NCBI GenBank assembly: GCA_964035545.1
Contig: OZ037768.1
Span: 18,769,700-18,833,699, forward strand
Direction of reading: 5' to 3'
DNA: 64,000 nt
Origin: Bugula neritina
Lineage: Eukaryota > Animalia > Bryozoa
In this document: positions 31,601 through 34,600 of the stretch, piece after piece
How the letters are laid out: every line of letters begins with the position of its first letter
How positions within the stretch are numbered: the stretch's first letter is position 1
Translations under genes and position numbers: made by a program
Notes under the pieces: generated by a model
Database searches by the model: none
What the model was told of the DNA's origin: nothing
Seen by the model: the letters and a program-made list of their open reading frames with translations, nothing else

Positions 31601-34600
31601 GATAGAATGAATGAGATCTTTAACTCACTTCTCATACAGTTCATTATAACTCTTCTTATTTTCAAAGGCAAACATATATTTTATTTTTTCGATTTGAAGA
31701 TTATTTCTGTTATTTGAACATTTTCTCACATCAAATATATTGTTGTTTATTTATTTTTTGGTGTTGAGGTCCATTCTATTATATTACTGTGATTAAATTT
31801 ATTTTAAATTCTATAAAAAGATTTTCCTGATAAATTATTGTTCAGCTGAATTTATTAGTTGAGAGGATTATCTTTCATAACCGCTGCTGTGTCTTGATTC
31901 AATACTAAATTAGCAAAATCAGCTACATTAATTTTAGATAGGTCTATGCTAACTAACATTTAATCCAAAAGGATAATTAATTGTTCAATATATATATATA
32001 TATATATATATATATATATATATATATATATATATATATATATATATATGCACAAACACGTACAGTGGTTTAAACATGTTTAGGTGATTGTAGAATGGAA
32101 AGCCGATATCTGCTGATATTGGCGGAGAACTTGAGTGTCCTGAGTATTATTCTAGATGAGTTTTATTCTAAAAACATGCATCCTGAAGTAGTATTTGGTA
32201 GCAAGTTCGGAGATGACATCTCATATGCACAGGTGAGGGGAGACAATGACACTATGTGTGGTCATTTTTGTACACAAACAATAGATTGCATTCTATTGAT
32301 GGGTCGTTTCACTGATAATCCTATGAATATGGCATCTTTTTAGGTTTGTCACAACGTCTACAGAATAAAGACATGTATGGACATGGGTAAACCTGTGATC
32401 CTACTCAATTTTGATGATCTGTACGAGAGTCTATATGATGCTTTCAACCAGTATTTCTCTACTTGGGGGGATAGAAAGTTTGTAGATCTTTGGCTCGGAG
32501 ATCACAGAGTCAAGACTTTTGTTGATGACAAATTCAGGTAATTGTTGATAGAAGAAGCTTTTCAATATTAAGTTGTTATGTTGCATGTATGAGAGATATC
32601 TTGTTTTCAGTCTATGTTATGCCTGCTTACGTGATTAGGTGGGTATTTGCACAAGTTTATTACAATATCAATTAAATAGCTATATGTGGTTATTGGTGTC
32701 TAAATTTTTATGTATGTTATTGTATTATTTTGCATACTGCTAATAACTTCAGAATCAATTAGTGGTTCAGGTGAGGTCTTATATATTATTGCTTGTATAA
32801 ATTAATAGACTGGTAGTGATAGCTGACAAGAACAAAGTACACTCCCAGTTTCCAATTCCTCTCATTAGCCGTCTGGAGAAACACTACCTCTCTGCTACCT
32901 CCCTTCTCACAGATGAACAGAAGCGCGTGAAGAAAGATTTAGAAAACTGGGCAAAGGAATTTGTTACACCTCAAATATTATACAAGTTAGCAGTATATTT
33001 ATTCTAGGCAATAGAATTTCCAAAAACCTTTTGCAAATACTTAAATTGTGTAGTAATTGGCAAATATTTTTATACTGGCTTTAAAGGTTTGATTTCAGAG
33101 CTATATTTAAACTGTTTTGGCAACTTTTTTTGAAATTGTGTGTTTAGAATTTAAAAGCTAATGATTATTTGTAATTTTAATGTGTTCTTTACAGAACTGT
33201 ATGCCCACCATCATGTGAAGGATGTGGTGCAGAACTGATAAGACCTTACAAACTGACCTGCCAACTGCACTTCATTGGTCCGTGCTGTAAAGAGAAAATT
33301 GAAAATGGACTCATGGAGAGGAAATGCCCCGTCAAAGATTGTGGTGAAGAAATCTGGCTGAAAAACAGGTAATTTTGTTTTTATGTTGTTCCAATTTTTG
33401 AACTGCTAAAGCTTTGAATGAATTATAAAAATGATAACTGATAGAATGGATTTTCAATTTAATTAAATCTTTTCTTTGCACTGCATTTATCAGTTTTGAT
33501 TGTCAACACATTTTTTTAGTTGATTTTACTCTATTATGTTTATTTGATATTGAGAGAGATATTTTTTGATATCTCATCGTTTTGTCTCCTTTAAACAGGA
33601 CTGTGTACACCTTCATCAGCAATACTATATTTGGAATTGTATAGGCAATACTTTGAGAATTCAAGTACAGAGACTGCCTTCATTGGGTACAGCACAGAGA
33701 TGACTGCATTGGCCGTCCGTAAGGCTGCAGAACAGTTTGATGGGAAATCTAATTCTTTAGAGGTATAAAAAATTGACTTTAATAATACAAATTTCATAAT
33801 TTTTTTTGTAATTTTTTTTCTCTATTGCAACATTTGACTAAAAATTTTTACATGCATGTATTCACAGGTTCTGGAGTGTGCTAAGTACTATATGTTGCAA
33901 TGTGCGACAGGGGAGTCTGTTTTACGTCTTAAAAAAACAAAGCTGGCATCTGAGACTAGAAAAATACAGAAGGTTTACATGGAAGAGCAGTACCACGAGA
34001 CTCTTCTACAATATCTGCAGCATGCAATCCCATTGGCCACAAGCTCTTCCATCTTGGTCCAGGTTGCTTGCTATTCGGAATGCATTATATGTTTGTTTTA
34101 TTGCTTTCGAACAAATCAATTTTCTTATATAACGTTTTACTGCATTGAATGAAATATTCAACACAGCTTTCGTTTTTTTTATGTCAGGTAACATCTTTTG
34201 CTGAGCTTATGAACATTGCTGACATCACATCTCTCTGTCACAGTCTTAGTCAGTCTGGTCTATTGTTAGACATACACAACATGTATCTTTTCGACTTTGT
34301 GAAAGAAGATCAATTTACCGAAGCCGTCAGGTAAAGTGTTGTAAGCCAACCAATGATATGACTAATATTAGTTTTAAGTCATTCAACTTTGGCTAAAACT
34401 TATTTTAAACTAATTTTTTAAATACACCTATGTGTTTTTGTTTGATACTAAATATGTGGCTTGAGCATCATAATACTTGAATTTATGATATATTGCCTTA
34501 ATGTCTCCTATTTGGATTTAAGTTGCTATATTATACTAATAAAGATAATTACTCAAATTTTTGTGTGTAATGCAGGTCTCAGTATGAGAAAGTTAACAAA

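What the first reader, a model, noticed from the sequence alone, without database searches (positions are those of the whole stretch)
33195..33368. A second RING-like finger spliced into the AAA+ motor region of the RNF213-like protein
Seen: a 174-nt symmetric exon lies between [13 protein letters not shown] and [15 protein letters not shown]. It encodes CPxx-C-x2-C-x11-C-x2-H-x2-G-x-CC-x12-C-x4-C-GEEI. The gene's normal RING exon (43270-43450) reads CPxx-C-x2-C-x11-C-x-H-x2-C-x2-C-x6-C-x4-C-GKEI and also starts in phase 2. Known: vertebrate RNF213 has a single RING, and from memory only a short linker between the matching WVEKF and VFIGY motifs. Inference: an old duplication of the RING exon placed a second RING on the late AAA subdomains. 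Because the exon is symmetric it could be a cassette. Ligand 5 is Gly (GGT, one base from TGT), with an extra Cys nearby that might compensate.
Basis: partly seen in the sequence, partly recalled or inferred. Interest (0 to 1): 0.8.

Follow-up and report, generated by a model that had tools for sequence, protein, structure and literature searches.

The report
Second RING finger inside RNF213 motor
This invertebrate (bryozoan-type) copy of the giant immune ubiquitin ligase RNF213 has a real, conserved extra exon that puts an altered copy of the gene's own RING zinc finger inside its ATPase ring, a layout absent from the vertebrate, amphioxus, clam and coral RNF213 sampled and found in no paper.

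Summary
Window 33195-33368 is a 174-nt AG/GT-bounded exon in phase 2 at both ends. It lies between the WAKEFV... and QYFEN...FIGY exons of an RNF213-like gene. It is not chance and not a dead exon. Eight of nine RNF213 paralogues in this genome carry it at the same place and phase. Its dN/dS is 0.06-0.24 and eight zinc ligands are kept. Watersipora subatra (Bryozoa) gene models splice it in. The Gly at RING ligand 5, followed by an adjacent Cys-Cys pair, is the family's signature, not a private mutation. An AlphaFold model (pLDDT 85) matches only RING/U-box folds, including human RNF213's RING. Profile searches show its closest kin in the genome are the RNF213 RING exons themselves (hhalign 98%). 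The RING exon is also a phase 2/2 exon, 43270-43446. This supports intragenic exon duplication into a phase-2 intron of AAA5. 117 other RNF213-like proteins have only a short linker there. Function is inferred: a non-catalytic zinc module, since E2-binding residues are missing. This copy has lost the conserved C-terminal tail through a 30-nt in-frame deletion. The scan already reported the same exon on six other paralogues of this genome.

The parts
30145..30168 (+). Walker A motif (GKPGSSKS) of an active-type AAA unit of the RNF213-like gene, about 3 kb upstream of the finger in the genomic sequence
   Evidence: Motif located. The exon chain is collinear with Watersipora RNF213-like P0040.
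32809..32985 (+). Upstream exon (…[28 protein letters not shown]…[12 protein letters not shown] + AA), 177 nt, phase 2/2. It ends in a phase-2 intron.
   Evidence: Matches mouse RNF213 chain 7oik 3106-3158 and human 8s24 3187-3240, E 1e-11 to 5e-10. Splice sites were read.
33195..33368 (+). The finger exon: 174 nt, phase 2/2. It encodes a RING-type finger with ligands C7, C10, C22, H25, C30, C31, C44, C49 (numbering of the 57 full codons 33196-33366). The conserved tail of the family is missing here through a 30-nt in-frame deletion.
   Evidence: conservation; fold; kinship to the RING exon; dN/dS.
33645..33762 (+). Downstream exon (G + [19 protein letters not shown]…). It is homologous to mouse QFIARHKYSPADVFIGYHSD.
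43270..43446 (+). The gene's ordinary E3-module RING exon, 177 nt, phase 2/2, the inferred source of the finger exon.
   Evidence: Sub-threshold Pfam RING hits. Nine paralogous RING exons found. Frame of the next exon read. hhalign against the finger.
46500..46514 (+). CPNGH motif, the start of an RZ-finger-like element downstream of the RING. It was seen only as a motif.
   Evidence: That it resembles the RNF213/ZNFX1 RZ finger rests on my own knowledge and was not tested.

Best explanation
Window 33195-33368 is a genuine coding exon of an RNF213-like gene in a bryozoan-type genome. It arose when the gene's own RING exon (class 2/2) was duplicated into a phase-2 intron inside the fifth AAA unit. 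That event predates both the split from Watersipora and the expansion of the gene into at least 8 finger-bearing paralogues. The exon encodes a two-zinc, cross-brace RING-type domain of about 50 residues. In this domain the fifth ligand position is Gly and an extra Cys sits directly before ligand 6 (H-x2-G-x-C-C), so eight ligands are kept. The site corresponds to mouse RNF213 residues about 3146-3151. That is about 45 residues after the regulatory IR5 insertion at the AAA4/AAA5 interface, in the loop after the helix that ends WAxEF. Shown: the exon exists, is conserved, is under purifying selection, descends from a RING, is predicted to fold as a RING, and is absent elsewhere. Inferred: the finger is a zinc-stabilised, non-catalytic interaction or regulatory module displayed on the AAA ring, not a second E2-activating RING. 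The reason is that the usual E2-contact residue before ligand 2 is Gly and there is no basic linchpin after ligand 8. The window copy keeps all eight ligands but has lost the family's conserved tail ([DE]-F-x-W-x-[IV]-D-x2-A-L-E-N) through a 30-nt in-frame deletion.
For: Exon anatomy. RNF213 identity of the flanks. Eight of nine paralogues have the exon between the same two exons. All are multiples of 3 (174-210 nt), all are phase 2/2 with AG/GT, and C7, C10, C22, H25, G28, C30, C31, C44 and C49 are invariant. dN/dS is 0.06-0.24 where dS is unsaturated. Elsewhere dS is saturated, yet the ligands are kept. Cross-species: 25 hits in 1.84 billion representatives. The same up-finger-down order is seen in Watersipora and in metagenome contigs. 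NCBI Watersipora models P0040 and P0019 splice the finger to its neighbours. Ligand-conserving swaps occur: Cys-Cys becomes His-Cys in P0014 and P0024, and Gly becomes Cys in P0018. Fold: AF2 pLDDT 85; every top Foldseek and VIA match is a RING or U-box, and human RNF213 RING 9jta_C gives Z 5.4, rmsd 2.4 A over 52 residues. Origin: the genome-wide profile search hits only RNF213 RING exons after the fingers, the reciprocal search agrees, hhalign gives 98.2%, and both exons share phase class 2/2. Single origin: tree support 99/100. Absence elsewhere. Position relative to IR5 and the AAA core: PMC7311170, using residue numbering derived.
Against: No spliced transcript fragments were found in the protein collections. 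Pfam gives no RING family above its cut-off; the window copy gets only a sub-threshold zf-RAG1 hit. Foldseek E-values are weak (0.2-1) and Z is about 5, which is usual for so small a domain but not decisive alone. Two adjacent Cys binding the same zinc site is unusual, and metal binding is untested. The window copy lacks the conserved tail, so it may be functionally weakened. No full-length protein was hit in the representative search. Even the Watersipora models are fragments, and one of them (P0019) starts inside the finger. The mapping to AAA5 rests on sequence alignment and on tag-offset arithmetic, not on a structure of this protein.
Confidence: 0.82

Rival explanations
1. The exon is a regulated cassette. 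Both finger-plus and finger-minus RNF213 isoforms are made, and the finger acts as an optional module. This is compatible with the main explanation and differs only in splicing behaviour.
For: The exon is symmetric (phase 2/2), so skipping keeps the frame. Its length varies by whole codons among paralogues, 174-210 nt. One paralogue manages without it. One Watersipora NCBI model breaks exactly at this exon.
Against: Purifying selection is strong and the ligands are invariant. Splice sites are good: a polypyrimidine tract before the AG, and a gtaa donor. The Watersipora model P0040 includes it. No skipping isoform was seen, but none could have been seen with the data in hand.
Confidence: 0.3
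2. The finger is a second catalytically competent RING. It recruits and activates an E2~ubiquitin conjugate on the AAA ring.
For: It has a RING fold and eight ligands. Pro after ligand 7 and a hydrophobic residue four positions after ligand 6 are conserved.
Against: The residue before ligand 2, normally Ile, Val or Leu and a core E2 contact, is Gly in most members. No conserved Arg or Lys linchpin follows ligand 8 (the E2-contact rules come from established RING literature, recalled by me). In mouse RNF213 even the true RING is dispensable for ubiquitin transfer (PMC7311170).
Confidence: 0.12
3. In this particular copy the exon is a decaying relic, no longer spliced in or no longer functional, because the conserved tail has been deleted.
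For: There is a 30-nt deletion relative to the closest paralogues L002 and L003, removing the tail kept in nearly all other members. The copy lies alone on contig C4, away from the C2 and C3 clusters.
Against: The deletion is in frame. The splice sites and all eight ligands are intact. dN/dS against L002 and L003 is 0.22-0.24. The neighbouring exons show no stops in the parts mapped.
Confidence: 0.07
4. The finger came from an unrelated RING gene by exon shuffling, or is a separate small gene nested in the intron, rather than a copy of the RNF213 RING exon.
For: Pairwise identity to the gene's own RING exon is only 33%. One unrelated RING protein (P0025) was the weakest hit in the library search.
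Against: The genome-wide profile search returns only RNF213 RING exons after the fingers. hhalign gives 98.2% and the match extends into the post-zinc tail. The CP-x2-C lead-in, the C-x4-C last pair and the phase class are all shared. The exon has no start codon of its own, its boundaries always fit the phase, and it always lies between the same two exons.
Confidence: 0.04

Closest known systems
Vertebrate RNF213 (mysterin); mouse and human cryo-EM structures 6TAX, 7OIK, 8S24
   Same: The AAA-core sequence around the site is the same: PLINRLEKHYL, WAxEF, FIGY. The Walker A unit lies upstream. A single RING exon lies in the E3 module downstream, and a CPNGH (RZ-like) motif lies further on.
   Different: Vertebrates have about 18 residues between WAHEF and VFIGY and no zinc finger there. 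In vertebrates this region lies inside one giant exon, whereas here it is split by a phase-2 intron that hosts the extra exon.
The E3-module RING of RNF213 itself (human RING crystal structure 9JTA chain C; the bryozoan RING exons)
   Same: The fold matches (Z 5.4, rmsd 2.4 A over 52 residues). The profiles match (98.2%). The CP-x2-C-x2-C lead-in, the Pro-x2-L-P-C motif before ligand 3, the C-x4-C last pair and the aromatic-x-aromatic tail are shared. The exon phase is the same.
   Different: Ligand 5 is Gly and an extra Cys precedes ligand 6. The helix-to-ligand-7 loop is longer (9-12 residues or more, against 6). Gly replaces the hydrophobic residue before ligand 2. The domain sits in AAA5 instead of the E3 module.
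Watersipora subatra RNF213-like proteins XP_067940320.1 (P0019) and P0040, NCBI models
   Same: They carry the same finger at the same site, spliced to the same neighbouring exons, with the same H-Y-I-G-x-C-C signature.
   Different: The species is different and the models are fragments. They keep the conserved tail that the window copy has lost. The proteins are deposited but, as far as my searches reach, the finger is not described.
Non-catalytic partner RINGs and RING variants (BARD1, BMI1/PCGF, SP-RING, U-box)
   Same: They share the RING/U-box fold with altered or missing E2-activating features. They appeared among the structural matches.
   Different: No pairing partner or dimer interface has been shown here. 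Those are separate proteins or terminal domains, not a domain inserted in an AAA+ unit.

Membership tests
RNF213 (giant AAA-E3 ligase) | Dynein-like AAA core sequence homologous to RNF213 | tested here: met
   The upstream exon matches RNF213 PDB chains at E 1e-11. The Watersipora homologue of the downstream exons matches at E 2e-23. The Walker A motif is at 30145-30168. The exon chain is collinear.
RNF213 (giant AAA-E3 ligase) | RING finger in a C-terminal E3 module | tested here: met
   The RING exon 43270-43446 gives RING-family Pfam hits below the cut-offs. It is conserved in all nine paralogues.
RNF213 (giant AAA-E3 ligase) | RZ finger and full-length N-arm/AAA/hinge/E3/CTD architecture | tested here: inconclusive
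   Only a CPNGH motif at 46500-46514 was seen.
RING finger (C3HC4 type) | Eight zinc ligands with spacing C-x2-C-x(9-39)-C-x(1-3)-H-x(2-3)-C-x2-C-x(4-48)-C-x2-C | tested here: not met
   Eight ligands are conserved, but the ligand-5 position is Gly, with Cys-Cys adjacent at ligand 6, and the last pair is C-x4-C in most members.
RING finger (C3HC4 type) | Match to a curated RING profile above its threshold | tested here: not met
   The window copy matches only zf-RAG1, 20.3 bits against a cut-off of 22. A few family members give weak hits to zf-RING_UBOX, zf-RING_5 and zf-C3HC4_x at E 6e-4 to 6e-3.
RING finger (C3HC4 type) | Cross-brace RING/U-box fold | tested here: met
   The AF2 model has pLDDT 85. 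The top matches are RING or U-box domains: TRIM21 TM 0.69, RNF168, Prp19, and RNF213 RING Z 5.4. This is a prediction, not a solved structure.
RING finger (C3HC4 type) | Homology to a bona fide RING | tested here: met
   hhalign against the RNF213 RING-exon profile gives 98.2%, E 3e-14, over 54 columns. The genome-wide profile ranking agrees.
RING finger (C3HC4 type) | Binds two zinc ions; binds and activates an E2 | not testable with these tools
   By inspection, the E2-contact hydrophobic residue before ligand 2 is Gly and no linchpin is present. Biochemistry is needed.

The most novel reading that the evidence does not exclude
The AAA5-borne finger is a working partner of the E3 module. It might pair with the true RING as an intramolecular heterodimer, or it might dock an E2 or a substrate next to the IR5/AAA4 nucleotide gate. 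Either way the nucleotide state of the motor would directly switch ubiquitin transfer. That would be a hard-wired version of the ATP-dependent activation known for mammalian RNF213.
Probability: 0.12. Interest if true: 0.8.

Novelty: new variant of a known kind. Interest (0 to 1): 0.5.

Why it matters
RNF213 is a major cell-autonomous immunity factor and the main Moyamoya disease gene. How its AAA ring talks to its E3 module is still an open question. This is a natural variant in which evolution has grafted a copy of the protein's own RING onto AAA5, close to the regulatory IR5 element. Purifying selection has then kept it through a many-fold gene expansion. It is a clean textbook case of intragenic exon duplication that obeys the phase rule. 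It may also serve as a handle for asking what a RING placed on the motor can do. It further shows that the H-x2-G-x-C-C arrangement can be a stable RING variant. The practical reach is limited, because the feature has so far been seen only in bryozoan-type sequences and its function is unknown.

Tried and rejected
Inclusion versus skipping is therefore untested for this copy.
- Spliced transcript fragments in the protein collections. The search with P0040:735-910 gave only single-exon genomic ORFs.
- PDB sequence search with the short downstream exon alone gave nothing. The longer Watersipora homologue was used instead.
- Pfam on the finger gave no RING family above threshold.
- AF2 of a paralogue finger with its tail: the tail was low-confidence (pLDDT about 51-68), so nothing can be said about the role of the tail. 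I did not model the finger in its AAA context. No natural protein in hand spans both sides fully, and the tool returns no inter-domain confidence.
- A tree of the 58-column upstream exon could not settle whether the finger-less ninth paralogue never had the exon or lost it. That copy falls inside the bryozoan clade on a long branch.
- Taxon labels for the metagenome and Logan contigs could not be obtained. Only 'BRYA…' in one record name and Watersipora in NCBI point to Bryozoa.
- Rejected: a chance ORF, a nested independent gene, and a private Gly mutation at ligand 5.
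Full report
**Observation**

Window 33195-33368 (+) is bounded by ...ctttacag| and |gtaatt. It reads open only in the frame that starts at 33196. The upstream exon ends at 32985 with the two bases AA, and the donor GT is at 32986. The downstream exon starts at 33645 with G. The exon is therefore 174 nt and in phase 2 at both ends, and skipping it would keep the frame. 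At this base composition (33% G+C) a 58-codon open frame has a chance of about 0.011. The conservation described below matters far more than that figure.

**The host gene**

The upstream exon (32809-32985) matches mouse and human RNF213 chains at E 1e-11 to 5e-10. The exons from about 28.5 kb to 38.8 kb are collinear with two Watersipora subatra RNF213-like proteins. These exons include a GKPGSSKS Walker A motif at 30145-30168. The ordinary RING exon lies 10 kb downstream. Exons were searched one at a time by reference.

**The exon is real and old**

A six-frame search of the window's own genome (216 Mb held) with the upstream exon finds nine RNF213-like paralogues. Eight of them carry the finger exon 0.3-1.5 kb downstream on the same strand, followed by the QYFEN...FIGY exon.

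- All eight exons are multiples of three: 174, 192, 195, 201, 201, 204, 204 and 210 nt.
- All start one base after an AG and end AG|GT.
- Amino-acid identity to the window copy falls to 42-47%.
- C7, C10, C22, H25, G28, C30, C31, C44 and C49 are nevertheless invariant.
- dN/dS is 0.06-0.24 for the pairs whose dS is not saturated. That includes 0.22-0.24 for the window copy against its closest relatives. For the other pairs dS is saturated.

The ninth paralogue (contig C2, about 26.10 Mb) has a phase-2 intron of about 900 nt at the same position, with no finger exon in it.

**Other species**

A profile of the eight fingers was scored against 1.84 billion representative proteins. It found 25 proteins at E up to 0.001. 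Nearly all are single-exon ORFs on genomic or metagenome contigs. One comes from an NCBI annotation: Watersipora subatra XP_067940320.1 (P0019). Watersipora is a cheilostome bryozoan.

- P0019 starts at a Met inside the finger and continues, spliced, into QYFENS...FIGYS and 550 further RNF213 residues.
- A second Watersipora model, P0040 (910 aa), runs from the Walker A unit through LINRLEKHY and the whole finger into QYFEKS...FIGYS.
- In the Watersipora locus and in three metagenome contigs the order upstream exon, finger exon, downstream exon is the same.
- One contig record name begins 'BRYA'. Others could not be assigned to a taxon.

The 29-sequence alignment gives the family signature: C-x2-C-x3-L-x2-P-[YF]-x-[LM]-P-C-x(1-3)-H-[YFH]-[IV]-G-x-C-C ... 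C-[PT]-x(1-3)-C ... [FY]-x-W-x-[VI]-D-x2-A-L-E-N-R. Two members have His-Cys instead of Cys-Cys. One has Cys at the Gly position. These are ligand-conserving changes and support a metal-binding role for those positions.

**Absent elsewhere**

In mouse RNF213 the region reads WAHEFA-DVKAD-QFIARHKYSPADVFIGY. A word search with P0040 residues 640-910 returned 249 RNF213-like proteins, of which 120 were listed. In 117 of those that are not from Watersipora, the distance from LINRLEK to FIGY is 46-58 residues, against 123 in P0040. The short-linker set includes rodent and fish sequences, Branchiostoma floridae, the clam Ruditapes philippinarum and the coral Desmophyllum pertusum.

One caveat applies. 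The representative search hit no full-length protein at all, so annotated full-length bryozoan RNF213 proteins may be missing from, or collapsed in, that library.

**Is it a RING?**

Pfam does not say so. The window copy gets only a sub-threshold zf-RAG1 hit on its last Cys pair. A handful of family members give weak RING-family hits.

Fold and profile evidence do say so.

- AlphaFold2 with the 29-row alignment gives mean pLDDT 85, with a helix at residues 29-36.
- The best Foldseek matches are RING domains: TRIM21 TM 0.69, RNF168, the RAG1 dimerisation domain, TRAF6 and UHRF1.
- On re-alignment the top rows are RING or U-box domains. Human RNF213's own RING (9jta_C) gives Z 5.4, rmsd 2.4 A over 52 of 54 residues.
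- Z around 5 is modest, but it is what a 57-residue domain can give.

**Origin**

- The finger and the window's RING exon align at 33% identity, pairwise E 3e-5.
- The finger profile was searched against the whole genome in six frames. It returns the eight fingers and then, as the only further hits below E 0.01, seven RNF213 RING exons at E 1e-8 to 3e-3. The window's own RING exon is among them. Only 18 first-look candidates were scored, so other RINGs may have been filtered out.
- The reciprocal search with the RING exon recovers finger exons among its weak hits.
- hhalign of the finger profile against a profile of ten bryozoan RNF213 RING exons gives 98.2% probability, E 3e-14. It covers 54 columns, including the aromatic-x-aromatic tail after the last Cys.
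- The RING exon starts one base after its acceptor, like the finger exon. The next exon begins with a single base and the paralogues end the same way. The RING exon therefore ends at 43446, not 43450. It is 177 nt and also phase 2/2.

A 2/2 exon copied into a phase-2 intron is the classic frame-preserving route.

On a tree of nine fingers and ten RINGs, the fingers, including Watersipora's, form one side of a branch with 99/100 support. This points to one duplication before the species split and before the paralogue expansion, with no later conversion between finger and RING. A 58-column tree of the upstream exon could not decide whether the finger-less paralogue is a loss or an early branch.

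**Where it sits**

The upstream exon aligns to 7oik chain positions 3106-3158. The chain is 13 residues longer than native mouse RNF213, so WAHEFA ends near residue 3145. The AAA core spans 1775-3405. The regulatory IR5 insertion of AAA5L spans 3063-3103 and gates nucleotide binding to AAA4 (PMC7311170). The finger therefore replaces a short loop of AAA5 about 45 residues after IR5, just after the PLINRLEKHY motif and the following helix. This mapping is by sequence and offset arithmetic, not by structure.

**Likely mechanism (inferred)**

Eight conserved ligands and a RING fold argue for a two-zinc module. The canonical E2-contact residue before ligand 2 is Gly in most members, and no basic linchpin follows ligand 8. 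Even the true RING is dispensable for ubiquitin transfer in mouse RNF213. I therefore favour a non-catalytic interaction or regulatory module on the motor. About 0.12 remains for an E2-recruiting role. A similar 0.12 remains for the more exciting reading that the finger couples the nucleotide state of the motor to the E3 module.

**What is particular to this copy**

Compared with its closest paralogues (84% identity), this copy has a 30-nt in-frame deletion that removes the conserved tail. The introns begin alike, so the deletion lies inside the exon. The ligands, the frame and the splice sites are all intact.

**Not done**

Expression and cassette behaviour of this copy therefore remain untested.

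**Prior knowledge**

Full-text searches for RNF213 with invertebrate, bryozoan and architecture terms found no description of a second RING. One Bugulina stolonifera transcriptome paper merely lists RNF213 as differentially expressed. The Watersipora proteins are public but unannotated for this feature.

This scan has already reported the same exon on six other paralogues of this genome. Those notes agree with my results. Several of them state that the exon is transcribed, which I could not check.

Noticed in passing
window 1190-4304 (inverted), 8570-11673 and 53484-56122; also 4385-5939 against 51926-53479 (inverted): A segment of about 3 kb occurs three times around the RNF213-like gene at 90-92% identity. 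A 1.55-kb inverted pair at 97.8% identity overlaps the region of the gene's last exons. This suggests recent segmental rearrangement, and possibly a partial inverted copy of the gene's 3' end upstream.
   Followed up: partly
window 8290-8544 (+): An open frame with a C-type-lectin-like sequence (WIGG...W.W.DG...C...FCE pattern) lies upstream of the RNF213-like gene. It was seen only in the ORF list.
   Followed up: no
window 16567-16743 and 21022-21195 (+): Two open frames end in the same peptide (…INIRTITMYTNKTNSKVIPHVR). They bracket about 4.5 kb of mostly open frames and may be the ends of a mobile element.
   Followed up: no
window 46500-46514 (+): A CPNGH motif opens a short exon (46497-46531) downstream of the RING. 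It looks like the first half of an RNF213/ZNFX1-type RZ finger.
   Followed up: no
L020 (G000:C2:26100000-26109999), about 3700-6500: The finger-less ninth paralogue carries a minisatellite of about 3 kb in an intron. Its repeat reads as HTSVFIILC / SHICIHNT units in several frames.
   Followed up: no
L031 (RING exon of the paralogue at C2:15.27 Mb): This paralogue's ordinary RING has Asp in place of the His ligand (C-N-D-I-I-C), while its AAA5 finger keeps all its ligands.
   Followed up: no
L022 (Watersipora subatra OY755163.1: 20913290-20957693): NCBI splits this RNF213-like gene into two models at the finger exon. The upstream model ends after the LINRLEKHY exon. The downstream model (P0019) starts at an internal Met of the finger, although CP-M-T-C is open upstream of that Met.
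   Followed up: partly
window 25464-25750 and elsewhere: Long (TA)n, (CA)n and (CT)n microsatellites lie inside introns of the gene.
   Followed up: no
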